A DNA stretch of 38,098 nucleotides, taken from Octopus sinensis. Its lineage: Eukaryota. The number at the start of each line of letters is the position of its first letter. Positions within the stretch are counted from its first letter, which is position 1. The translations under genes were made by a program, and so were the position numbers. A model generated the notes under the pieces. The model did not search any database, was not told where the DNA came from, and saw only the letters and a program-made list of their open reading frames with translations. The stretch is taken from assembly GCF_006345805.1 (NCBI RefSeq), contig NW_021835813.1:1-38098 (forward strand), written 5' to 3'. Of the stretch, positions 5,277-35,576 are shown one piece after another.

Positions 5277-5438
5277 AGTTTTGGAGATGATGTACAGGTA
5301 TTATATATTAGAAGAAATGAGGTAATCAGAAGATCGGATGGTTTATATTTACAGATATTTATTTATATATATATCATATCACTTAGATCATTAGCGCTTT
5401 CTCTCATTCTAGTGGGGTTTTCAAATCAAAATAACTTC

Positions 5439-5588
5439 TGGGTTCTCTTTAAGAAGATGATCCAACATTTCACACGATGCATCTTCATGTTTCCATTTAT
5501 TATCTGCACTTCGATTTCAATTAATAAAACCTTCAAAGACATGCGAAAACGGCGCAAGTCCTAAACGGCGCATGTCCTAAAACGGCGG
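5439..5588 (-). pseudogene. SAMHD1-like fragment P1
   Basis: Encodes ..[29 protein letters not shown]; homologous to ~31765-31890; carries the 16-17 bp minisatellite. Confidence 0.8.
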
Positions 5589-6707: not shown

Positions 6708-6980
6708 TGACGGGCTTCTTTCAGTTTCCGTCTACCAAATTCACTCCCAAGGCTTTGGTCGTCGGCCCGAGGCTAAAGTAGAAGACACTTGTCCAAGGTG
6801 GCACTCGGTGGACTGAACCCGATAAAACATTCTTTCAGTTTCGTTTACCAAGTCCACTCACAAGAATTTGGTTGGCCCATGGTTACAGTAGAAAGCACTT
6901 GCTCAAAGTGCCACGCAGTGTGACTGAACCCCGAACCATGTTGTTGGGAAGCAATCTTCTTACCACACGGCCACACCTGC
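6708..6980 (-). mobile_element. Two adjacent SINE head fragments; paralogue ~25719-25990
   Basis: Reverse complement of the SINE head (GACGGGCTTCTTTCAGTTTCCGTCTACCAAAT...ACTGAACCC). Confidence 0.7.
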
Positions 6981-7437
6981 TATTGCAGTGATATATATAC
7001 TTATCTCACATTTTATTTCACTATCACTAGTTTTATCATGTATAATATAATTACTACTATAGGTAAAATTTAGTATATTAATTATAGTTAAGTTAAGTTA
7101 ATTTTTGGGGCTCAAAAAGCAAAAAGCAAGGCCACGTAGGGGGACATGGAGTTATGTACAGGGGTGTTCATGCAAAGAGTTCAGGCTATTTCTGGTCAAG
7201 ACAGTCTTTGAACCGAGCGGTCGTCGGTACGTCACTGCCCCATAAACTCAAACGTCCCCTTCGACATTCCCAGAGTCCCCTCGGGGCAGTACCATCTACG
7301 TTGAGAATCCTTGGTGTGGTCGTGCAGATCAGCCTCAGTAATTATTTTTAAGTTTGGTACTTAGTCTATCACTTCCTCTGTTGCCGAACCGGTATTGAAA
7401 CACAAACACAAGCACAACCACACACACACACACACAC

Positions 7438-7479
<42 letters not shown>

Positions 7480-7829
7480 TACGCACATACACACATACAC
7501 ACACTCACAAACAAACAAATAAATTCAAACGCATTTTTTTCTATCGTCCTGTTTTCTCTCTTGAGAAATTAGGCTTCTCAAAACCAGAAAGGAGAAAGCT
7601 AATTTGAAGACTACAGATCCAATCCATCACTGCAACTGTAAAAACCTGTAAAACTTTCCAGAAGTTTATCATTTAAATATATATGAGCATGTCTAGATAT
7701 GCATTGAAAGAATGGCCGAAATTCATTCTCGCTGCTAAGTGAAGTCCGTCAGCTCATCGCAGCCGAAAGGTATATCGCAAAACAGGTATTCAAGTGTGGT
7801 GAATCTGGTTGGTTTTTTTTTAGGGCGGG

Positions 7830-8866
7830 GGGGGTGAATAAAATGCCTAGAAGGACCTACATAGCTCCAGAGAAGAAAATGACAGGCCATAAGCCAATAA
7901 AAGATAGGCTAACTCTTGCCCTTCATACCAATGCGAGTGGAGACTTAAAAACCAAGTCGCTCTTTGTCTACCATTCCGAAAACCCACGAGCGTTCAAGTC
8001 GCACAAAATCCTAAAAGAAAAGCTGCAAGTCATGTGGAGGGTAAACGTTAAAGCCTGGGTCATCAGGCAATTCTTCACCCAGTTGGTCAAACTTGTCTTC
8101 GGACCAGCAATGAAAAAGTGCCTTCCGGAGAACGATCTTCTTCTCAACGTCATTCTCATCCTCGATAATGCTCCTGCTCACCCTCCTAACTTCCAAGATG
8201 ATATCCTGGACGAATTTAAATTCATAAAAGTTGTGTACTTTTCACACAACACCACCCCATCTTTCAGCCCATGGACCAACTGGTAATCTTGAATTGTAAG
8301 AAATTGCACACCAAACATCTGTTTCGTTGGTGCTTTGAAGTCACCGAAAATACAAATCTAACTCTTCATGAGTTTCGTATGGAGCACTACAACATTGTAA
8401 ACTGTCTGAAAATCATCGATATGGCCTGGCAGGGTGTAACAAGAAGAATGTTGAATTCTGCATGGAGGAAATTGTGGTATCGGAAAGCGACTTCGTGGGG
8501 TTTGAGTGTGAGACACTTGTACTTGAGGAGTGTATCTTGGCAAGTCCATAGGCCTCGAGGTTGTTGATAGGGACATTAACGATCTCGTCGAGGAACACTC
8601 CGAGGAGCTAACCACAGGTGAATTCTTTCAGCTTCAGGAGCAAAAGCACGTATGTGTGTGTATTAGGTGAACAGATGCGAAAGGAATGTGTATGTCTTTG
8701 AAGTAAAAAAATGAGTGAATCGCTTCAGAGTTAAAAATAATTTATTCACTGGACTTAATTTGTCGTTGGTACACATAATTCTTCACTACATGCAAAATGT
8801 TGACAACTGCTACGAGTTGCTAGAATTAAAAACAGGGTACATCTGTGGAAGTGATGTGTCAGAAAT

Positions 8867-15225: not shown

Positions 15226-16225
15226 TTATCTTTCAACTTCATTTTTGTTTGGCTCTTCCTTTTCCTTTTCCTTTTCCCTTTCAAAAGAATATTTGACCTT
15301 CATTTGAAATTTGCCTAGCAGTAACAGCATCTCTTCTAGTTCATCTGGTTCATAATTGAATGATACTTTTTTTATATCCGTACTTTTTTTATAAAATGGG
15401 ATTTTTACGAGTGGGTTTTCCTCTCCAGCTCCATAATCGAAATTAGCTTCACAGACTATATTGCCCGGTTCTTTGCCTTGGTCATTTCTATCCTCGACTG
15501 TGCCTTTGTACTTATAAGATCGATACATTATATCCTTCAATTTATTCTGGGCCTCTTTGAGGTTTTCATTATCCTCATTCTTTAATATCTCCTCCAAAAT
15601 ACTATCTGTAAAATAAGTAAATTTCTTCATATCGTCGACCTTTTCGAAAATTTTCAGGTGTTTATCTGCGGATTTGAAGGCCTCGCCAAGTAGTTTATTA
15701 AACAGAAGAACAGTTTTGTGTTGGTAAGCTGTTTTATGTAATCGATATCGGGATTAAAACATATCAAAGAAATTATCAAGAGTTTTGTCTCCGTAGCATG
15801 TTTGATCACCTATTACTTTGGACATTTTTATCATTCTTTCGTGATCAAATGACTTTCCAATACCAAGAAAATGGGAATCTCTCGCTAGATTATCCCATTT
15901 ATCAACGTCGATGTTATAGGAAGAATTGTTGATAATTTGGTAAAGAAATTGTGGTTTCGCGGAATTTCCTGATTTACCAATGATAAGATCTTTTATGAAA
16001 GCAATTTCATCGGGCTCAAGTTTTTCTTTAACATGTGGGTTCTCTTTAAGAAGATGATCCAACATTTCACATGATGCATCTTCATGTTTCCATTTATTAT
16101 CTGTTTTTAGATTTTCTGCATCTTCATGTTTCCATTTATTATCTGTTTTTCGATATTCATCAATAAAATCTTTAAAGACATGCGAAAACGGCGCATGTCC
16201 TAAATCATGACACAAACCAGCAATT
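15226..16225 (-). pseudogene. SAMHD1-like pseudogene P2 (3' two-thirds)
   Basis: IAGLCHDLGHAPFSH to ..EEPNKNEVER*. 5' part replaced by (TAC)n; TAT>TAA stop at 15754-15756; DY>DN; 42-bp internal duplication. Confidence 0.9.
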
Positions 16226-16314
<89 letters not shown>

Positions 16315-17558: not shown

Positions 17559-18276
17559 GTATTATGAGACGAATGAAATGCCTCTAACCATTTTGTCCGG
17601 CGCGGAAACGATTCTACCAGCTCGCCACCTTTCTCTGCTCTTAAACAAGTATATATTTCAACGTGAGGATGGACGTTTTATTGCAGAAATGCTAGAGTGA
17701 TGGACATATTTGTCTTGCGGTATTCCTCTCATTTCTTTATATTCTGAGTTCAAATCGCAGCGGAGTTGACTGTGACTTTCGTTTTTCTAAAGGCGATGAG
17801 ACATATACTGAATAAATAATAAGATTTTCCATTTGGCTTTAGGTCGTCTAGAAAATAATGGCGAATCTTCTGTCGTTGACAGCTAAAGCAATTTTCATAT
17901 TTGCAGGAGTGGCTGTGTGGTAAGTAGCTTGCTAACACACCACATGGTTCCGGGTTCAGTCCCAATGCGTGGCATCATGGGCAAGTGTCTTCTGCTATAG
18001 CCCCGGGCCGACCAATGCCTTGTGCGTGGATTTGGTTGTCGGAAACTGAAAATAAGCCTGTCGTATATATGTATATATATATATATATATATAGTGGAAG
18101 GTTTGGACATGATGTACAGGTATTATATATTAGAAGAAATGAGGTATTCAGAAGATCGGATGGTTTATATTTACAGATATTTATTTATATATTACATTTT
18201 TTACATATATATCATATCACTTACATCATTAGCGCTTTCTCCCATTCTAGTGGGGTTTTCAAATCAAAATAACTTC

Positions 18277-18593
18277 TGGGTTCTCTTTAAGAAGATGATC
18301 CAACATGTCACACGATGCATCTTCATGTTTCCATTTATTATCTGCACTTCGATTTTCATTAATAAAACCTTCAAAGACATGCGAAAACGGCGCATGTCCT
18401 AAACGGCGCAAGTCCTAAAACGGCGCATGTCCGAAACGGCGCAAGTCCTAAAACGGCGCATGTCCACAAACCAGCAATTTCCACGCAAAGTATATCGCGT
18501 TCAGATACTTTCGGAGGGGCTTTTTGTTGGTTAAGATGACGAATCATTTCCACAGCTAAATAACATGTCCCCAGGCAATGCTCGAATCTATTA
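18277..18593 (-). pseudogene. SAMHD1-like fragment P3, HD codons deleted
   Basis: NRFEHCLGTC..AVEMIRHL..ERDILCVEIAGL, then a five-unit minisatellite in place of CHDLG, then [14 protein letters not shown]. Confidence 0.85.
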
Positions 18594-18609
18594 CGAAAGG
18601 CAACAGCGT

Positions 18610-19072: not shown

Positions 19073-20175
19073 CAACAAGAACAGCAACAGATGGATCGAA
19101 TAAGTTTCACTTTCTGTAGTAAAGTACTGCGAAGATTGTCAGTTGTTTTGATAATTGTATGCGTGTGTGTATGCATGTGTATATGTGTGTCTGAATAACT
19201 GTGTGTAAATGTGTTCGTGTGTATGTCTGTGTACGTGTCTGATCTACATGTGTGTGTGTGTGTGTTGGTTTGTGAGTGCGTGCGTGCGTGCGTGTGTATG
19301 TCTGTGAATGTGTATGTGTGTGAGAGAGAGAAAGAGAGAGAGAGAGAGAGTTTATTGGAAAAGGAAGATAGAATTATCTACTGTAGAATTTTCTATACAA
19401 GAGAAGCTATAGCTTCGAGAAGGTGTGCTTCGTATAGAAGTATGGCGAGTAGCTAAACGTCTTCAGAAACTTTATATAAATCTCTTAGATCAGGTCACTT
19501 ATATATGGGACGTATATGAACTCTACCAACTGACCTAAATGTTTGTTTACTCGCTGCACTGCTCTCGTACGCCTACTACAATATCAGTATTAATCTAACA
19601 GTCATTAGTTAATGTTGTGCATAGCTCTTCAAGAGATTTCGATGTTTGTATCCGTTTGTCGAGCGATAAGATCTATAACAGTTAAGATTTGTCGTTAGGG
19701 TCAGGCTATTCATGAAGTTCTTATGCTCAATTCTTTCAAGAAAATTCAAGTGAAAATTCAAATAAAAGCGCTACAAGTCAAGCCCAAGCACTGATGGAAT
19801 AATCCTACATGACCCAATGTACTCAACTGGTAATAATTTTATCGATCCTGAATCGATTAAAGGTAAAGTCGACCTAGAATAAAATTGAAGGCGTAGAAGT
19901 AGCTGTGTGGTAAGTAGCTTGCTTACCAGCTTTGCAGGTTCAAGGGAGACTATTCATTTTGATTGGTTCAAATTGTAGAAATTGAAGAAAAAAACAACAA
20001 ATATCTTACAAACTATAGAATTTTCTCAATAAAGCCAAGAGAAAAAGATGTTTTATAAACACTTTCTACGAGTATAAGAAGTTTAAAATTTTTTAGGTAC
20101 CTAGAAATTATGTTAAAAACAGCCGTTCAAACCGAAAAGATCCGACGTCACTGATTGGTTGAAATTGCAGAAATT

Positions 20176-20249
20176 GAAGCTGATGGAAAAACATAATAAC
20201 ACAAACCTAATTGTTTGATGTTCCGTAATCTCTGAAATTGTACTGTATT
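20176..20249 (-). pseudogene. Isolated SAMHD1-like 5' motif fragment
   Basis: Near-identical to ~32026-32099 (TVQFQRLRNIKQLGLCYYVFPSAS), between a MITE end and (GGT)n. Confidence 0.85.
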
Positions 20250-20286
20250 GGTGGTGGTGGTGGTGGTGGTCGTGGTGGTGGTCGTG

Positions 20287-20331
<45 letters not shown>

Positions 20332-20402
20332 ACAGTGGCGGCTGCTGCTTCTAAATTTCACTTTCACTATTAATCTACTGCGAATTAAATCCGTCATCTT
20401 AA

Positions 20403-20456
<54 letters not shown>

Positions 20457-20460
<4 letters not shown>

Positions 20461-20731
20461 TTTCGAGGAATTTCCTGATTTACCAATGATAAGATCTTTT
20501 AGGAAAGCAATTTCATCGGGCTCAAGTTTTTCTTTAACATGTGGGTTCTCTTTAAGAAGATGATCCAACATTTCACATGATGCATCTTCAAGTTTCCATC
20601 TTTTATCTGTTTTTCGATTTTCTGCATCTTCATGTTTCCATTTATTATCTGTTTTTCGATATCCATCAATAAAATCTTTAAAGACATGCGAAAACGGCGC
20701 ATGTCCTAAATCATGACACAAACAAGCAATT
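20457..20731 (-). pseudogene. SAMHD1-like fragment P4
   Basis: CLCHDLGHAPFSHVFKDF...IIGKSGNS; sister of P2 (same 42-bp duplication); bounded by (GT)n and (GTA)n. Confidence 0.85.
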
Positions 20732-22165: not shown

Positions 22166-22329
22166 GAAGTTTTGGAGATGATGTACAGGTATTATATATT
22201 AGAAGAAATGAGGTAATCAGAAGATCGGATGGTTTATATTTACAGATATTTATTTATATATATATCATATCACTTAGATCATTAGCGCTTTCTCCCATTC
22301 TAGTGGGGTTTTCAAATCAAAATAACTTC

Positions 22330-22613
22330 TGGGTTCTCTTTAAGAAGATGATCCAACATTTCACACGATGCATCTTCATGCTTCCATTTATTATCTGCAC
22401 TTCGATTTCAATTAATAAAACCTTCAAAGACATGCGAAAACGGTGCAAGTCCGAAACGGCGCATGTCCTAAAACGGCGCATGTCCACAAACCAGCAATTT
22501 CCACGCAAAATATATCGCGTTCAGATACTTTCGGAGGGGCTTTTTGTTGGTTAAGATGACGAATCATTTTCCCAGCTAAATAACATGTCCCCAGACAATG
22601 CTCGAATCTATTA
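22330..22613 (-). pseudogene. SAMHD1-like fragment P5, HD codons deleted
   Basis: Same structure as P3 with three minisatellite units. Confidence 0.85.
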
Positions 22614-22630
22614 GGAAGAGCAACAGCGTC

Positions 22631-23325: not shown

Positions 23326-23907
23326 TACATACATACATACATACATACATACATACATACATACATACATACATACATACATACATACATACATACATAC
23401 ATGCATGCACGGCGGCACCTTGAAAAATTTGTTGTCGACTATTTCGACCCCAATACTTTTTTTTTTAATCCTTTTAAGCCTGGTACTTACTCTATCGGGC
23501 TTTTATGCCCAACCGCTAAGTTACTTTTTTTAGTCATTTGACTGCGACCATGCTGGTGCACCGTCGTAAAAATTTTTTAGTGGAATTTATCTACTCCTGT
23601 GTCTATTTTTAATGCCTGGTACTTATCCTATCGATTTTCACACGATGCATCTTCATGTTTCCATTTATTATCTGCACTTCGATTTCAATTAATAAAACCT
23701 TCAAAGACATGCGAAAACGGCGCAAGTCCTAAACGGCGCATGTCCTAAAACGGCGCATGTCCACAAACCAGCAATTTCCAGGCAAAATATATCGCGTTCA
23801 GATACTTTCGGAGGGGCTTTTTGTTGGTTAAGATGACGAATCATTTTCCCAGCTAAATAACATGTCCCCAGACAATGCTCGAATCTATTAGGAAGAGCAA
23901 CAGCGTC

Positions 23908-30338: not shown

Positions 30339-31007
30339 TGTGAGCGTCCGTTGGGGTGTGTGAAAGGAGGTACGTCTGTGTTAGTGTATTGGTATACTTA
30401 TGTGGGTGGGTGTTAGCGTGTGTTCGTCGTGTGAGAGGAGGAGTCTCTGTTTTTGTGTATTCGTGTGCTTAGCTATCTATATGAGTTTGTGAGTGTGTGC
30501 AGGTGGGTGTACGCCAACCAAATCTCAAACAAACATTCTCCACTCCTTGTATTTGTCACTACAGTTATACAATCAAACGATATATTTTCAAAGTAAGAAA
30601 ACATGCTAAAATTTAAAGATCGAAGACGTTTGGTTAAAGGAAAACATTTTCTATAAAGAAAGACAAAACATTAAAATTATCTTTTACCATTTAGTTTCTA
30701 CTACAGAGCTGCGGCCACGCTGAAGCACCAAAAACTATTGTTCGTTTAGTATTTCTAACTTTTGAAATTTTTCAGTAGTTAAGTATATTTTTATGATTTT
30801 TTAACTTTCACCAATTTTCACTTCAATTCTCATACTGTTTCATTGGTTTATTTTCTTTGATTAGTAATTTTCAATATGATTATTTTGTTGTTGCTTTTTC
30901 TCTAGATTCTTGTTTTTCAGTTTGCTTTTTTTTTATATCCAGTAATTATTATTTATTATTTTAATCATTTTCTCTTATCTTTCAACTTCATTTTTGTTTG
31001 GCTCTTC

Positions 31008-32207
31008 CTATATCCTTTCAAAACAATATCTGACATTCAGTTGAAATGTGCCTGGCAGAAACAGCATCTCTTCTAGTTCATCTGGATTATAATTGAATGA
31101 TTCATGCATATTTCCTCTTTCATAAAATGGGATTTTCACTAGTGGGTTTTCATTTCCAGCTCCATAATCGAAATTAGCTTCACAGACTATATTGCCCGGT
31201 TCTTCGCCTTGGTCATTTCCATCCTCGACTGTGCCTATGTACCTATAAGATCGTTTGATTATATCATTCAATGTATTCCGAGCCACTCTGAGGTTTTCAT
31301 TATCCTCATTCCTTAATATCTCCTCCAAAATACTATCTGTAAAATAAGTAAATCTCCTCATATCGTAGACATTTTCGATAATTCCCAGGTGTCTCTCTGC
31401 GGATCTTAAGGTCTCGCAAAGTAGCGTATTAAACAGAAGAACAGTTTTGTGTTGGTAAGCTGTTTTATGTAATCGATATCGGGAATAAAACATATCAAAG
31501 AAATTATCAACAGTTTTGTCTCTGTAGCATATTTGATCACCTATGACTCTGGACATTTTTATCATTCTTTCGTGATCAAATGACTTTCCAATACCAAGAA
31601 AATGGGAATCTCTCGCCAGATAATCCCATTTATCAACGTCGATGTTATAGTCTCTATTGTTGACAATTTGGTAAAGAAATTGTGGTCTCGCGGAATTTTC
31701 TGATTCACCAATGATAAGATCTTTTATGAAAGCAATTTCATCAGGCTCAAGTTCTTCTCTAACATGTGGGTTCTCTTCAAAAAGATGATCCAACATTTTA
31801 CATGATGCATCTTCATGTTTCCATCTATTATCTGGTCTTCGATTTTCATTAATAAAACCTTCAAAGACATGCGAAAACGGCGCATGTCCTAAATCATGAC
31901 ACAAACCAGCAATTTCCACGCAAAGTATATCTCGATCAGATATCTCCAGATCGGGATTTTGCTGTTTTAGACGACGAACCAATTTCCCAGCTAAGTAACA
32001 TGTCCCCAGACAATGCTCGAATCTATTATGCGAAGCTGATGGAAAAACATAATAACACAAACCTAATTGTTTGATGTTCCGTAATCTCTGAAATTGTACT
32101 GTATTAATAATTTTAACACAGAGAGGCGGCAACTCCATAGATCCGTGAATAGCGTCATGAAAAACCTGATCCGAATCCATACGGCTTGAATTTTCAGATT
32201 GAGTCAT
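31008..32207 (-). CDS. SAMHD1-like: Intronless SAMHD1-like HD-domain dNTP triphosphohydrolase, gene A (399 aa from first ATG; frame open to TTG at 32348)
   Basis: FHDAIHG, QFQRLRNIKQLG, HNRFEH, GLCHDLGHAPFSH, WKHE, DVDKWDYLARD, R..LH..AYQHK, TDSI, DYG..NP align colinearly with the human SAMHD1 HD domain. All four metal ligands (H167, H206, D207, D311, human numbering) are present. No SAM domain. Confidence 0.92.
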   Translation of the reverse strand: MTQSENSSRMDSDQVFHDAIHGSMELPPLCVKIINTVQFQRLRNIKQLGLCYYVFPSASHNRFEHCLGTCYLAGKLVRRLKQQNPDLEISDRDILCVEIAGLCHDLGHAPFSHVFEGFINENRRPDNRWKHEDASCKMLDHLFEENPHVREELEPDEIAFIKDLIIGESENSARPQFLYQIVNNRDYNIDVDKWDYLARDSHFLGIGKSFDHERMIKMSRVIGDQICYRDKTVDNFFDMFYSRYRLHKTAYQHKTVLLFNTLLCETLRSAERHLGIIENVYDMRRFTYFTDSILEEILRNEDNENLRVARNTLNDIIKRSYRYIGTVEDGNDQGEEPGNIVCEANFDYGAGNENPLVKIPFYERGNMHESFNYNPDELEEMLFLPGTFQLNVRYCFERI

Positions 32208-32747
32208 TATTAAATTATTAGGAAAACAGCTAAATTTTTGGTGGGGCTTTCGTTTATGTTGCTGTTGTTGTTGGTTTTGTTGGTGGTGGTCTCGTTGTTG
32301 CTGCGTGTGTTGGTTTTGAAATGTGGAGCAGAAATATAAGTTATCCAATTATGTTTAGTTGGCTATTTCTAATATTTGATTTGAAGAGATCTCAGTTGTA
32401 TTGGCATTTAGATATGTGATGTCAGAAATAATATCAGCGATCCCGAAATTGGTTCTGTGTTTGGTGGCAACAAAACAAAATAAACAGTGTTGTTATATCA
32501 GAAGTCAGCTGACAACCGAACCCGATTGTCACAGCTGTTATCTCATTCGATACACAACTTTTACTTTGTTTTATAAGCATAAACAACTTCAACATCAACA
32601 ACACCACCACCGCAGCAGCAGCAGCAGCGGCACTAATAGCAGCAGGAGCAGCAATAGGAAAAGCAACAGCGTCAGTAGTTGGTGGTGGTGGTGGTGGTGG
32701 TGGTTTTGGTGGTTGTGGTGGTGGTGGTTGTGGTAGTAGTGGTACTT

Positions 32748-32792
<45 letters not shown>

Positions 32793-32886
32793 ACAGTGGC
32801 GGCTGCTGCTTCTAAATTTCACTTTCACTATTAATCTACTCTACTGCGAATTAAATCCGTCATCTTAACCGGTATTGTGTGTTGTG

Positions 32887-32927
<41 letters not shown>

Positions 32928-33507
32928 GTGTTGTGTGTGTGTGTGTGTGTGTTAGCGTGCGTTCACCGTGTGAGAGGAAGAGTGTCTGTTTTGTGTATTC
33001 GTGTGCTTAGCTATCTATATGAGTTTGTGAGTGTGTGCAGGTGGGTGTACGCCAACCAAATTTCAAACAAACATTCTCCACTCCTTGTATTTGTCACTAC
33101 AGTTATACAATCAAACGATATATTTTCAAAGTAAGAAAACATGCTAAAATTTAAAGAAATCGAAGACGTTTGGTTAAAGGAAAACATTTCCTGTAAAAGA
33201 AAGACAAAACATTAAAATTATCTTTTATCATTTATTAGCTTCTACTACAGAGCTGCGGCCACGCTGAAGCACCAAAAACTATTGTTCGTTTAGTATTTCT
33301 AACTTTTGAAATTTTTCAGTAGTTAAGTATATTTTTATGATTTTTAACTTTCACCAATTTTCACTTCAATTCTCATACTGTTTCATTAGTTTATTTTCTT
33401 TGATTAGTAATTTTCCATATGATTATTTTGTTGTTGCTTTTTCTCTAGATTCTTGTTTTTCAGTTTGCTTTTTTTTTATATCCAGTAATTATTATTTATT
33501 ATTTTAA

Positions 33508-34731
33508 TCATCTTCTCCTTCTTCTTTGGCTCTTCCTTTTCCTTTGAAAACAATATTTGATTTTCATTTGAAATTTGCGTGGCAGTGACAGCATCTCTTC
33601 TAGTTCATCTGAATTATATCTCAATAATTCATGCGTACTTTTTTTATAAAATGGGATTTTCACTAGTGGGTTTTTCTTTCCAGCTCCATAATCGAACTTA
33701 GCTTTACAGACTATATTGCCCGGTTCTTCGCCTTGGTCATTTCTATCATCGACTGTGCCTTTGTACTTATAAGATCGATAGATTATATCCTTCAATTTAT
33801 TCTGGGCCTCTTTGAGGTTTCCATTATCCTCATTCTTTAATAATTCCTCCAAAATACTATCTGTAAAATAAGTAAATTTCTTCATATCGTCGACCTTTTC
33901 GAAAATTTTCACGTGTTCATTTGCGGATTTGAAGGCCTCGCCAAGTAGTTTATTAAACAGAAGAACAGTTTTGTGTTTGTAAGCTGTTTTATGTAATCGA
34001 TATCGGGAATAAAACATATCAAAGAAATTATCAACAGTTTTGTCTCTGTAGCATATTTGATCACCTATTACTTTGGACATTTTTATCATTCTTTCGTGAT
34101 CAAATGACTTTCCAATACCAAGAAAATGGGAATCTCTCGCCAGATAATCCCATTTATCAACGTCGATGTTATAGGATTTATTGTTGATGATTTGGTAAAG
34201 AAATTTTGGTCTCCTATAGATTTCTGGTTTACCAGTAATGAGATCTTTTATGAAATCAATATCATTACGCTCAACTTTAATACGTGGGTTCTCTTTAAAA
34301 AGATGCTCTAACATTTTACATGATGCATCTTCATGTTCCCACTCTTCACCTCCATTTTCCTTGCGATACTCGTTGATAAAACCTTCAAAGACATGAGAAA
34401 AAGGCGCATGTCCTAAATCATGACACAAACCAGCAATTTCAACACAAAGTATATCTCGATCAGATATTTCCAGATCGGGATTTTGCTGTTTAAGATGGCG
34501 AACCATTTTCCCAGCTAAGTAACATGTCCCCAGACAATGCTCGAATCTATTATGCGAAGCTGATGGAAAAACATAATAACACAAACCTAATTGTTTGATG
34601 TTCCGTAATCTCTGAAATTGTATCGTATTGATAATCTCTACACAGAGAGGCGGCAACTCCATAGATCCGTGAATAGCGTCATGAAAAACCTGATCCGAAT
34701 CCATACGGCTTGAATTTTCAGATTGAGTCAT
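33508..34731 (-). CDS. SAMHD1-like: Intronless SAMHD1-like HD-domain dNTP triphosphohydrolase, gene B (407 aa from first ATG; frame open to TTG at 34872)
   Basis: Same motifs as gene A with intact metal ligands; AYKHK variant; basic tail RKRKSQRRRRR. Tandem unit spacing to gene A is about 2.5 kb. Confidence 0.92.
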   Translation of the reverse strand: MTQSENSSRMDSDQVFHDAIHGSMELPPLCVEIINTIQFQRLRNIKQLGLCYYVFPSASHNRFEHCLGTCYLAGKMVRHLKQQNPDLEISDRDILCVEIAGLCHDLGHAPFSHVFEGFINEYRKENGGEEWEHEDASCKMLEHLFKENPRIKVERNDIDFIKDLITGKPEIYRRPKFLYQIINNKSYNIDVDKWDYLARDSHFLGIGKSFDHERMIKMSKVIGDQICYRDKTVDNFFDMFYSRYRLHKTAYKHKTVLLFNKLLGEAFKSANEHVKIFEKVDDMKKFTYFTDSILEELLKNEDNGNLKEAQNKLKDIIYRSYKYKGTVDDRNDQGEEPGNIVCKAKFDYGAGKKNPLVKIPFYKKSTHELLRYNSDELEEMLSLPRKFQMKIKYCFQRKRKSQRRRRR

Positions 34732-35281
34732 TATTAAATTATTAGGAAAACAGCTAAATTTTTTGTGGGGCTTTCCTTTATGTTGCTGTTGTTGTTGGGT
34801 TTGTTGGTGGTGGTCTCGTTGTTGCTGCGTGTGTTGGTTTTGAAATGTGGAGCAGAAATATAAGTTATTCAATTATGTTTAGTTGGCTATTTCTGATATT
34901 TGATTTGAAGAGATCTCAGTTGGATTGGCATTTAGATATGTGATGTCAGAAATAATATTCAGCGATCCCGAAATTGGTTCTGTGTTTGGTGGCAACAAAA
35001 CAAATAAACAGTGTTGTTATATCAGAAGTCAGCTGACAACCCGAACCCGAATGTCACAACTGTTTTCTCCTTCGATACACAACTTTTACTTTGTTTTATA
35101 AGTATAAACAACTTCAACATCAACAACAACACCACCGCAGCAGCAGCACAGCGGCACTTATAGCAGCAGGAGCAGCAATAGGAAAAGCACAGCGTCAGTA
35201 GTTGGTGGTGGTGGTGGTGGTGTTCGTGGTGGTTGTGGTGGTGGTAGTAGTAGTAGTAGTAGTTTTAGTATAACGACTTGG

Positions 35282-35576
35282 GCCTTTTGAGTGGATTGGT
35301 AGACGGAAACTGGAAAGAAGCCCGTCGGTATATATGTATATGTATATATGCCTGTGTGTGTTTGTGTGTCTGTGTTTGTCCCCCTAGCATTGCTTGACAA
35401 CCGATGCTGGTGTGTTTACGTCGCCGTAACTTAGCGGTTCGGCAAAAGACTCCGATAGAATAAGTACTGGGCTTACAAAGAATAAGTCCCGGGGTCGATT
35501 TGCTCGACGAAAGGCGGCGCTCCAGCATGGCCGCAGTCAAATGACTGAAACAAGTAAAAGAGTAAAAGAGTAAAAA
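35282..35576 (+). mobile_element. 5'-truncated SINE
   Basis: GGTAGACGGAAACTG...GGCGCTCCAGCATGGCCGCAGTCAAATGACTGAAACAAG followed by (TAAAAGAG)n tail. Confidence 0.85.

What the first reader, a model, noticed from the sequence alone, without database searches (positions are those of the whole stretch)
31008..31427. Gene A has lost almost all lysines from its C-terminal lobe
From the first ATG I count 15 Lys in A (399 aa) and 43 in B (407 aa). After HKTVLLFN the counts are 2 vs 24, and P2 has 21 in its last 134 aa. Many changes are A>G (K>R, K>E), but others are K>T (ACA, ACG), K>N (AAT), K>I (ATA) and AAG>TAG. Several mutation types converging on Lys loss point to protein-level selection. One hypothesis is escape from ubiquitin-dependent degradation, the route lentiviral Vpx uses against primate SAMHD1 via CRL4-DCAF1. 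An alternative is genomic fixation of ADAR-type recoding through cDNA-mediated conversion, as K>R and K>E are typical A-to-I outcomes. Shared flanks argue against A being an independent retrocopy.
Basis: partly seen in the sequence, partly recalled or inferred. Interest (0 to 1): 0.85.

Follow-up and report, generated by a model that had tools for sequence, protein, structure and literature searches.

The report
Lysine-purged octopus SAMHD1-like paralogue
One of two tandem, intronless SAMHD1-like enzyme genes on this Octopus sinensis scaffold has replaced almost every lysine in its C-terminal half, often with arginine, in a way that fits selection on the protein far better than a mutation or RNA-editing bias; the purpose, perhaps dodging ubiquitin-type tagging, is untested.

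Summary
Gene A (minus strand, 31008-32207, 399 aa) has 15 Lys and gene B (33508-34731, 407 aa) has 43. After HKTVLLFN the counts are 2 and 24.

The window is an unplaced Octopus sinensis scaffold. It carries a 2.3-kb tandem duplication of an intronless SAMHD1-like HD-domain gene.

Outgroups show that the Lys-rich state is ancestral. Twenty other octopod copies have 13-36 Lys in this lobe. About 4-5 of B's lysines are gains on B's side.

A lost about 17-19 of about 18-20 ancestral Lys codons: 8-9 to Arg, the rest to Thr, Asn, Ile, Glu, Gly or stop.

- Lys codons changed in 19 of 20 cases; other codons in 17 of 119 (P=1e-12).
- Simulations with the same mutation spectrum lose 5.3 Lys on average (maximum 14 in 20,000); 17 were observed.
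- A>G hits in-frame AAR codons (8/18), never out-of-frame AAR (0/23) and never synonymous A sites outside Lys codons (0/31).
- dN/dS is about 4 in this lobe and 0.23 in the catalytic core.
- Catalytic residues are intact, and the equivalents of human K455 and K523 are Arg.

Protein-level selection against lysine is well supported. ADAR hard-wiring and neutral decay are disfavoured. Escape from ubiquitin is plausible but untested.

The parts
31008..32207 (-). Gene A: intact single-exon SAMHD1-like HD-domain ORF, 399 aa from the first ATG, stop TAG at 31008-31010
   Evidence: ORF list. Pfam HD PF01966, E=7e-11. Human SAMHD1 PDB chains, E=6e-88. AF2 model pLDDT 93.5, pTM 0.92.
31008..31427 (-). 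Lys-depleted C-terminal lobe of A (codons 261-400): 2 Lys (K318, newly gained; K358, retained) against 19-24 in the nearest copies
31428..31778 (-). Upstream extension of the Lys loss (codons 144-260): K144E, K150R, K152E, K168E, K174R, K185R, K220R. The Lys kept here are at positions that are Lys in nearly all copies.
   Evidence: 7 Lys in A against 13-15 in B and P2 over codons 141-260.
31242..31244 (-). Codon 322, AGG (Arg). It aligns with human SAMHD1 K455 (a cationic residue near allosteric site 1) and is Lys in B, P2 and canonical SAMHD1.
   Evidence: phmmer alignment to 6tx0_A; codon table; PMC10711556.
31116..31118 (-). Codon 364, AGA (Arg). It aligns with human SAMHD1 K523 (contacts the triphosphate in allosteric site 2). 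It is Lys in 12/12 other octopod copies and in at least 90% of 50 homologues.
   Evidence: PMC7854603.
33508..34731 (-). Gene B: intact Lys-rich tandem paralogue, 407 aa. It gained about 4-5 Lys, and its tail (RKRKSQRRRRR) is read in a different frame from P2's.
30401..32740 (-). Tandem duplication unit that contains A. It pairs with 32940-35260 (92% identity, 136 mismatches). Flanks differ by about 1-3% and the CDS by about 10%.
32940..35260 (-). Tandem duplication unit that contains B
15226..16224 (-). P2: 5'-truncated SAMHD1-like pseudogene. It has an in-frame TAA at codon 241 that the O. vulgaris copy shares, and a (TAC)n tract replaces its N-terminal part. It keeps 19 Lys in the aligned C lobe, so it serves as a neutral control.

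Best explanation
Gene A is an intact member of an octopod-specific family of intronless, SAM-domain-less SAMHD1-like dNTP triphosphohydrolases. The family is tandemly amplified and exchanges sequence by gene conversion.

A's C-terminal half descends from a Lys-rich sequence like those of B and P2. It then went through a short burst of directional selection on the protein that removed nearly every dispensable lysine. About half became arginine, including the two lysines equivalent to human K455 and K523. The rest became T, N, I, E or G, and the Lys-containing tail was cut off by AAG>TAG. The catalytic core stayed under purifying selection.

What is shown: the polarity of the changes, their specificity for Lys codons and for the reading frame, dN/dS above 1, and intact catalytic residues.

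What is inferred: selection acted on lysine as a chemical group rather than on charge. The most likely benefit is that this surface can no longer receive a lysine-directed modification. Ubiquitin or a ubiquitin-like tag that leads to degradation is the leading candidate; acetylation and SUMOylation are alternatives. Such tagging could come from the host's own turnover machinery or from an antagonist in an arms race.

My confidence by layer: selection on Lys identity about 0.8; avoidance of a Lys-directed modification about 0.45; ubiquitin-dependent degradation specifically about 0.3.
For: Polarity:
- 20 other octopod copies, including two from Argonauta, have 13-36 Lys in this lobe with K/(K+R) of 0.55-0.96. 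A has 2 Lys and K/(K+R) of 0.14.
- The per-position table shows Lys in the majority of outgroup copies at most of the lost sites.

Specificity for Lys codons:
- Lys codons changed 19/20 against 17/119 for other codons (P=1e-12).
- Codons hit by changes other than A>G are also enriched for Lys (10/24, P=0.001).
- Spectrum-matched simulation never reached the observed loss: mean 5.3, maximum 14, observed 17.

Not a mutational bias:
- A>G hit 10 of 36 first and second positions of Lys codons but only 4 of 125 other A sites (P=5e-5).
- A>G hit 0 of 31 synonymous A sites outside Lys codons.
- The middle A of AAR triplets changed to G in 8/18 in-frame cases and 0/23 out-of-frame cases (P=5e-4).
- A>G occurred at 14/161 sites and T>C at 0/100, which excludes GC-biased gene conversion.
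- The pseudogene P2 keeps 19 Lys.

Selection:
- In the C lobe, A versus B gives dN 0.174, dS 0.045 and omega 3.9 (P=0.01). A versus the reconstructed ancestor gives omega 4.3 (P=0.026).
- In the catalytic N lobe omega is 0.23.

Charge is not the target:
- 8-9 of the losses are charge-conserving K>R.
- A's net lobe charge of -12 lies inside the family range of -15 to +12, whereas its K/(K+R) is an outlier.

Function is retained:
- The ORF is intact. H65, H104-D105 and D192 (human H167, H206/D207, D311) are present.
- The K455 and K523 equivalents are Arg.
- The AF2 model is confident.

The changes were stepwise and continued:
- The chromosomal copy As keeps K261 and K299 but has lost K358.
- Another O. 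vulgaris copy (VL2g) carries only K307R, Q310R and K322R.
- The O. vulgaris copies Vg1 and Vg2 carry K299R and a K275E intermediate.

Precedent: lysine-to-arginine replacement that limits ubiquitination has been described for VHL and SOCS1 (PMC10665810).
Against: - No expression, protein, turnover or modification data exist for A.
- The second O. sinensis copy (As) has ATG>ATA at the start, an in-frame TAG and indels. The A-like O. vulgaris copy (Vg1) is frameshifted and Lys-rich in codons 261-335. A-type genes may therefore be dispensable or decaying, although homopolymer indels in this long-read assembly may be errors.
- The dN/dS significance is modest (P=0.01-0.09) because there are few synonymous sites.
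- Gene conversion among paralogues blurs the ancestral reconstruction. Some Aw-only changes (codons 261-281) could come from a donor copy that was not sampled.
- A keeps 13 Lys in its first 260 residues, so it is not protected from ubiquitination in general.
- The longest Lys-free run is 63 aa, which does not meet the published definition of a lysine desert.
Confidence: 0.6

Rival explanations
1. Selection acted on surface charge, nucleic-acid binding, localisation or the tetramer interface (for example to stop A mixing with its paralogues in tetramers), not on lysine as such. Lys loss would then be a by-product of making the lobe acidic.
For: - The lobe's net charge differs by 24 between B (+12) and A (-12).
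- B moved the other way: it gained Lys and has an Arg-rich tail.
- About half of the losses go to neutral or acidic residues.
- Cationic residues of the human C lobe lie near bound RNA (PMC10711556).
Against: - 8-9 of the changes are charge-neutral K>R. They were fixed at many times the synonymous rate, which a charge model does not predict.
- A's net charge is within the family range (P0006 -12, P0011 -15), but its K/(K+R) of 0.14 is far outside the range of 0.55-0.96.
Confidence: 0.2
2. A-to-I (ADAR) recoding was hard-wired into the genome. In this view B-type transcripts are edited at these Lys codons, and an edited cDNA converted the A locus, writing many A>G changes in at once.
For: - A>G is the largest class of change (14-15 of 35-39 substitutions), with no T>C.
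- The host is a coleoid, where recoding is abundant. K>R and K>E are what A-to-I editing of Lys codons would produce.
- Synonymous divergence in the lobe is near zero, as a single-event origin would predict.
Against: - 8-10 of the Lys losses are A>C, A>T or G>T.
- A>G is restricted to one reading frame (8/18 against 0/23) and is absent from 31 synonymous A sites outside Lys codons.
- Different copies carry different subsets of the changes, and both O. sinensis copies went on losing different Lys, so this was not one event.
- In coleoids a genomic G at conserved recoding sites is selected against (PMC8382921).
Confidence: 0.05
3. Relaxed constraint or early pseudogenisation, combined with an A-depleting mutation bias, eroded the A-rich Lys codons.
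For: - The chromosomal copy As and the O. vulgaris copy Vg1 carry disabling lesions.
- The family is full of fragments and pseudogenes.
- Lys codons are A-rich.
Against: - Omega is about 4, not about 1.
- Spectrum-matched simulations lose only 5.3 Lys on average.
- 88% of those simulations create a stop codon, yet A's 399-codon ORF is intact.
- The true pseudogene P2 keeps 19 Lys, and its copy in O. vulgaris differs by only about 1%.
- The catalytic core of A has omega 0.23.
Confidence: 0.07
4. The Lys-poor tract was not made in place. It was copied into A by gene conversion from a Lys-poor paralogue elsewhere in the genome that was not sampled here.
For: - Mosaic conversion is common in this family. 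Segments of A match P2 and not B, and the reverse. The O. vulgaris copies Vg1 and Vg2 are homogenised. Another O. vulgaris copy (VL2g) shares the R-V-A-R motif with A.
- Seven changes unique to the window's copy of A cluster within 63 nt, at codons 261-281.
Against: - No other Lys-poor octopod protein appears among the database hits; only P0007 and P0121, which are A itself.
- Synonymous sites of A's lobe are nearly identical to those of B and P2, so any donor would be just as young.
- This only moves the question of why Lys was purged to another locus.
Confidence: 0.08

Closest known systems
Human/vertebrate SAMHD1 (dNTP triphosphohydrolase, antiviral restriction factor)
   Same: - HD-domain fold and full-length sequence similarity (E=6e-88 to PDB chains).
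- The catalytic His/Asp residues and most substrate- and allosteric-site residues are conserved.
- The C-terminal lobe is the regulated and antagonist-targeted part in primates.
   Different: - No SAM domain, no N-terminal extension and no long C-terminal tail. About 400 aa, intronless and tandemly amplified.
- Residues of allosteric site 1 differ in the whole octopod family (K116>Q, N119>H, D137>N).
- In A the K455 and K523 equivalents are Arg.
- No antagonist or antiviral role is known in cephalopods.
Lysine deserts / lysine-to-arginine replacement in VHL, SOCS1 and other ubiquitin-system proteins (Szulc et al. 2023, PMC10665810; PMC10169902)
   Same: - Evolutionary depletion of Lys, largely through K>R.
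- It affects a surface region of a folded protein while function is kept.
   Different: - A's longest Lys-free run is 63 aa, not the required 150 aa or 50% of the protein.
- The protein is not a component of the ubiquitin system.
- The purge happened quickly in one young paralogue, not gradually across orthologues.
Positive selection of primate SAMHD1 driven by lentiviral Vpx/Vpr (own knowledge: Laguette 2012; Lim 2012; Fregoso 2013)
   Same: Paralogue- or lineage-specific excess of non-synonymous change, concentrated away from the catalytic core.
   Different: - In primates a few residues at the antagonist-binding interface change. There is no wholesale removal of one amino-acid type.
- No antagonist is known here.
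Arginine-over-lysine bias in the A chains of ER-translocating AB toxins (own knowledge: Hazes and Read 1997)
   Same: Selective avoidance of Lys while basic charge is kept, interpreted as escape from ubiquitination.
   Different: Unrelated proteins and a different cellular context. Named only as a conceptual precedent.
Coleoid A-to-I recoding (PMC6881472, PMC8382921)
   Same: The same host clade. K>R, K>E and K>G are the amino-acid outcomes that A-to-I editing of Lys codons would give.
   Different: The changes here are in the genome, depend on the reading frame, and are mixed with transversions. Editing status is unknown.

Membership tests
SAMHD1-type HD-domain dNTP triphosphohydrolase | HD domain (PF01966) and full-length similarity to solved SAMHD1 structures | tested here: met
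   Pfam HD E=7e-11, above the curated cut-off. phmmer against PDB: 25 human/mouse SAMHD1 sequences at E of about 1e-85 to 6e-88.
SAMHD1-type HD-domain dNTP triphosphohydrolase | Metal-binding His...His-Asp...Asp residues (human H167, H206, D207, D311) | tested here: met
   A has H65, H104, D105 and D192 in the aligned positions. H65 and H104 are invariant columns, and D105 and D192 nearly invariant (at least 90%), among 50 homologues.
SAMHD1-type HD-domain dNTP triphosphohydrolase | Allosteric-site residues (human K116, N119, D137, Q142, R145, R451, K455, H376, K377, K523) | tested here: inconclusive
   The Q142, R145, R451, H376 and K377 equivalents are kept. K116>Q, N119>H and D137>N occur in A and B alike. 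K455>R and K523>R occur in A only. The effect on activation is unknown.
SAMHD1-type HD-domain dNTP triphosphohydrolase | N-terminal SAM domain | tested here: not met
   No SAM domain hit. The ORF begins at the HD core. The same holds for the whole octopod short family.
SAMHD1-type HD-domain dNTP triphosphohydrolase | dNTPase activity and tetramerisation | not testable with these tools
   Needs recombinant protein.
Lysine desert (Szulc et al. 2023) | Continuous Lys-free region of at least 150 aa or at least 50% of the sequence | tested here: not met
   Definition from PMC10665810. The longest Lys-free run in A is residues 255-317, which is 63 aa or 16% of the protein.
Lysine desert (Szulc et al. 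2023) | Evolutionary replacement of ancestral Lys, largely by Arg | tested here: met
   8-9 K>R among about 17-19 losses. K/(K+R) is 0.14 against 0.55-0.96 in the other copies.
Lysine desert (Szulc et al. 2023) | Reduced ubiquitination of the region | not testable with these tools
   Needs ubiquitin-remnant proteomics or cell assays.
Genomically hard-wired ADAR recoding | Changes are A>G only and follow RNA context rather than the reading frame | tested here: not met
   21 of 35 substitutions are not A>G. The middle A of AAR triplets changed to G in 8/18 in-frame cases and 0/23 out-of-frame cases.
Genomically hard-wired ADAR recoding | The same sites are edited in transcripts of the paralogues | not testable with these tools
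   No RNA-seq access.
Restriction-factor-like gene under positive selection | dN/dS above 1 localised to a surface region, with a conserved catalytic core | tested here: met
   Omega is 3.9-4.3 in codons 261-398 (P=0.01-0.03) and 0.23 in codons 31-140.
Restriction-factor-like gene under positive selection | A known antagonist or pathogen target | not testable with these tools
   None is known for cephalopods.

The most novel reading that the evidence does not exclude
A is a paralogue hardened against an antagonist. In an octopod-specific, rapidly diversifying SAMHD1-like defence family, one copy would have removed the lysines that a virus- or retroelement-encoded (or host) ubiquitin-ligase adaptor uses as acceptors on the C-terminal lobe. 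It would have kept dNTPase function by using Arg at the essential basic positions. This would be the first example of wholesale lysine removal as a counter-measure in an invertebrate restriction-factor family.
Probability: 0.2. Interest if true: 0.8.

Novelty: new variant of a known kind. Interest (0 to 1): 0.55.

Why it matters
If real at the protein level, this is a natural experiment. Two neighbouring genes share near-identical promoter and UTR flanks and near-identical catalytic cores, but one has lysines across its regulatory lobe and the other has almost none.

That makes it directly testable whether lysine-directed modification controls SAMHD1-like enzymes outside vertebrates. It also points to an undescribed SAMHD1-like gene family in octopods that is amplified, undergoes gene conversion and evolves fast, which is the pattern expected of an immune arms race.

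The finding also gives a clean case where codon-frame tests separate protein-level selection from the A-to-I editing signal expected in a cephalopod.

Tried and rejected
- GC-biased gene conversion: rejected. A>G occurred at 14/161 sites and T>C at 0/100.
- Context-driven or transcription-coupled A>G bias: rejected by the AAR frame test and by the absence of A>G at synonymous sites outside Lys codons.
- Treating L001 as a second species: corrected. The cluster look-up shows that the window itself is an O. sinensis scaffold. Its unique flanks differ from the chromosomal locus by only 0.4-1.2% in substitutions. A and As are therefore alleles or very recent duplicates, not orthologues from two species.
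- Looking for the same state in O. vulgaris: the positional counterparts (L003 Vg1 and Vg2) are frameshifted and Lys-rich in codons 261-335. The purge can therefore not be dated with confidence to before or after the species split.
- Formal lysine-desert membership: fails the length criterion.
- Literature search for octopus SAMHD1: found only a skin-mucus proteome that lists SAMHD1-like proteins without resolving paralogues.
- Not run: a second database search with the C lobe alone. The first search already ranked all octopod relatives at the top, and no further Lys-poor copy appeared.
Full report
**What the window is.** Base composition (27-42% GC), microsatellites and the protein hits identify an octopus genome. 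An exact cluster look-up shows that XP_036355961.1 (P0121, Octopus sinensis) lies on a contig of exactly 38,098 bp. The window is therefore an unplaced scaffold of the O. sinensis assembly GCA_006345805.1.

Two intact single-exon ORFs lie head to tail on the minus strand:
- Gene A, 31008-32207, 399 aa from the first ATG.
- Gene B, 33508-34731, 407 aa.

Both carry a Pfam HD domain. A matches solved human and mouse SAMHD1 chains at E=6e-88. The two genes sit in a tandem duplication (30401-32740 and 32940-35260, 92% identical).

A 5'-truncated pseudogene, P2 (about 15226-16224), and several shorter fragments lie upstream.

The chromosomal counterpart in the same assembly is L001 (CM016869.1, 10.67 Mb). 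In unique flanking sequence it differs from the window by only 0.4-1.2% in substitutions. Most of the apparent 3% difference is indels. The window is therefore a haplotig or a very recent duplicate of that locus. O. vulgaris has related loci, L002 and L003.

**Checking the observation.**
- 15 Lys in A and 43 in B.
- 2 and 24 after HKTVLLFN.
- 21 Lys in the last 134 residues of P2.
- The interval 31008-31427 is codons 261-400 of A.

**Polarity.** In the lobe after the HKTVLLFN motif, 20 other octopod copies have 13-36 Lys and K/(K+R) of 0.55-0.96. These include two Argonauta proteins and the conceptual translations of P2 and three O. vulgaris copies. A has 2 Lys (K/(K+R) 0.14), and its chromosomal twin As (P0007) has 3.

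A per-position table shows Lys in most outgroup copies at the lost sites. Examples, out of 12 outgroup copies:
- Position 279: 12.
- Position 284: 11.
- Position 299: 10.
- Position 364: 12, plus all canonical SAMHD1.
- Positions 307, 312 and 314: 9 each.

At about 4-5 positions (252, 343, 345, 352, 353), however, B gained Lys.

Across 119 SAMHD1 homologues from many phyla, A (1.4% Lys) and P0007 (2.1%) have the lowest Lys fraction in this region. The others average 10.1% (sd 3.0%, minimum 4.1%).

The loss also extends upstream to codon 144. After codon 140, apart from K318 (new) and K358, A keeps Lys only at positions where nearly all copies have Lys.

**Chance and mutation bias.** I reconstructed the pre-A sequence from seven non-A copies under a liberal rule and a strict rule.
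- Lys codons changed in 19 of 20 cases against 17 of 119 for other codons (P=1.3e-12). The strict rule gives 13/15 against 9/124 (P=7e-11).
- The losses are 8-9 K>R, 1 K>E, 1 K>G, 3 K>T, 3-4 K>N, 1-2 K>I and 1 K>stop.
- Codons hit by substitutions other than A>G are also enriched for Lys (10 of 24, P=0.001).
- When the same number of each mutation type is placed at random on matching bases, 5.3 Lys are lost on average, with a maximum of 14 in 20,000 runs. The observed number is 17.
- A>G hit 10 of 36 first and second positions of Lys codons but only 4 of 125 other adenines (P=5e-5).
- A>G hit none of the 31 synonymous A sites outside Lys codons.
- The middle A of AAR triplets changed to G in 8 of 18 in-frame Lys codons and in 0 of 23 out-of-frame AAR triplets (P=5e-4).
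- A>G occurred at 14/161 sites and T>C at 0/100, which excludes GC-biased conversion.
- P2 is a real pseudogene: its in-frame stop is shared with O. vulgaris and its interspecific divergence is about 1%. It still has 19 Lys in the aligned lobe.

Because the changes depend on the reading frame, a mutation process cannot explain them, and neither can RNA editing, which does not follow the reading frame.

**Selection and mosaic history.** For A versus B (NG86):

| Region | dS | dN | omega |
|---|---|---|---|
| Codons 31-140 (catalytic core) | 0.28 | 0.064 | 0.23 |
| Codons 261-398 (C lobe) | 0.045 | 0.174 | 3.9 (P=0.01) |

A versus its reconstructed ancestor gives omega 4.3 (P=0.026), or 5.2 under the strict rule (P=0.09).

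The flanks of the two duplication units differ by only about 1-3%, while the CDS differs by about 10%. Different segments of A group with different copies:
- Codons 120-186 group with P2, not with B.
- In the C lobe, B and P2 group together and A stands apart.

So this family evolves by frequent gene conversion, with selection acting on top of it.

Different copies carry different subsets of the A-type states:
- As keeps K261 and K299 but has lost K358.
- Another O. vulgaris copy (VL2g, the P0003 gene) has only K307R, E308V, Q310R and K322R.
- The O. vulgaris copies Vg1 and Vg2 have K299R, Y318K and GAA at codon 275, which is intermediate between AAA and A's GGA.

The purge was therefore stepwise and was still going on in both O. 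sinensis copies.

**Is A still a working enzyme?**
- The ORF is intact, whereas 88% of the spectrum-matched simulations create a stop codon.
- The metal-binding residues are present: H65, H104-D105 and D192, equivalent to human H167, H206/D207 and D311.
- Two lysines with known roles in human SAMHD1 are Arg in A (R322, R364) and Lys in B, P2 and nearly all homologues. One is K455, a cationic residue near allosteric site 1 (PMC10711556). The other is K523, a triphosphate contact in site 2 whose K523A mutant reduces tetramerisation and activity (PMC7854603).
- An AlphaFold2 model from a 50-sequence alignment is confident throughout the lobe (mean pLDDT 93.5, pTM 0.92). This mostly reflects the family alignment.

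Arg at the functionally needed basic positions, and non-basic residues elsewhere, is what selection against lysine itself would produce in a protein that must keep working.

Charge is unlikely to be the target. Half of the changes conserve charge, and A's net lobe charge (-12) lies within the family range (-15 to +12). Its Lys/Arg ratio does not.

The most economical mechanism is avoidance of a lysine-directed modification on this surface. Ubiquitin-type tagging is the leading candidate, by analogy with VHL and SOCS1, where Lys>Arg replacement limits cullin-RING ubiquitination (PMC10665810). Acetylation or SUMOylation of C-terminal lysines also regulates human SAMHD1 (for example K580, PMC11389391, seen; SUMO sites from my own knowledge). 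Nothing here identifies which modification is involved, or whether any antagonist exists.

A still has 13 Lys in its N-terminal 260 residues, so any protection would be regional.

The ADAR/cDNA alternative is disfavoured on four grounds:
- The transversions.
- The frame dependence.
- The stepwise pattern.
- The published finding that genomic G is selected against at conserved coleoid recoding sites (PMC8382921).

It cannot be excluded without RNA-seq.

**Caveats.**
- As has ATG>ATA at codon 1, a compensated indel pair that creates a TAG at codon 72, and a further insertion. Bs has a 1-nt deletion. The O. vulgaris copies Vg1 and Vg2 are frameshifted. Some of these may be homopolymer errors of long-read assemblies. 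Others may be real, which would mean that A-type genes are often lost.
- Gene conversion complicates any single tree. The seven changes unique to the window's copy of A, within 63 nt (codons 261-281), may come from a donor that was not sampled.
- The dN/dS tests rest on 1-4 synonymous differences.

**Comparison and novelty.**
- A belongs to the SAMHD1 family by domain, catalytic residues and fold. It lacks the SAM domain, and the whole octopod family has changed residues in allosteric site 1.
- It behaves like a lysine-desert protein but fails the formal definition: its longest Lys-free run is 63 aa.
- I found no literature on an octopod SAMHD1-like expansion or on this lysine purge. The only hit is a skin-mucus proteome that lists SAMHD1-like proteins.
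- I rate it a new variant of a known kind. It is moderately interesting and easy to test, but no functional data exist yet.

Noticed in passing
window 31008-34731 (RefSeq model XP_036355961.1 = P0121): The annotated 399-aa protein on this scaffold is a chimera. It has B-type residues (E32, I37, M76, H79) at the N-terminus and A-type sequence from about residue 122 onward. The model therefore splices B's 5' part onto A. Neither A nor B is annotated as its own uninterrupted ORF.
   Followed up: partly
window 33508-33560 (3' end of B) compared with 31008-31060 (A) and about 15226-15290 (P2): B's C-terminal tail (RKRKSQRRRRR, which looks like a nuclear localisation signal) is read in a different frame from P2's tail (EREKEKEKEEPNKNEVER), because B lacks 13 nt there. 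A's TAG truncates the P2-type tail. B also gained about 4-5 Lys, so the two neighbours diverge in opposite directions.
   Followed up: partly
window 30401-35260: The coding sequence of the tandem pair is about five times more diverged (about 10%) than its flanks (about 1-3%). Synonymous divergence is 0.28 in codons 31-140 but 0.02-0.05 in codons 187-398. This is strong mosaic gene conversion among family members.
   Followed up: yes
window 15226-16300 (P2); L002 4600-5800: In P2 a long (TAC)n microsatellite replaces the N-terminal third. P2 also has an internal duplication ([25 protein letters not shown]) and an in-frame TAA at codon 241. All of these are shared with the O. vulgaris copy, so this is an old pseudogene.
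   Followed up: partly
window 5433-5564, 18271-18601, 20175-20730, 22324-22621, 23637-23898 (all minus strand): There are further short SAMHD1-like fragments (residues about 84-216). They are embedded in repeated units of about 1.3 kb that also occur in the O. sinensis and O. vulgaris chromosomal loci.
   Followed up: no
window 7834-8286 (+): This ORF has a DDE_1 (pogo/Tigger-type) transposase domain, E=2e-16. It is a DNA-transposon remnant.
   Followed up: no
L001 9448-10789 (As) and 6940-8231 (Bs); L003 7127-8479 and 9638-10954: The chromosomal O. sinensis copy of A has ATG>ATA at the start, an in-frame TAG at codon 72 and indels. The chromosomal B has a 1-nt deletion. Both O. vulgaris counterparts are frameshifted. 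These are either widespread pseudogenisation or indel errors in the long-read assemblies.
   Followed up: partly
window 32100-32170 (codons 14-35 of A) and the same codons of B: The whole octopod short family differs from vertebrate SAMHD1 at residues of allosteric site 1 (human K116>Q, N119>H, D137>N). This suggests that activation by GTP may work differently.
   Followed up: no
window 32401-32736 and 34900-35400: Upstream of both genes lie (CCA)n/(TGG)n and (CAA/CAG)n tracts. They create long spurious ORFs rich in Trp or Gln and extend the A and B reading frames upstream of the first ATG without a stop.
   Followed up: no
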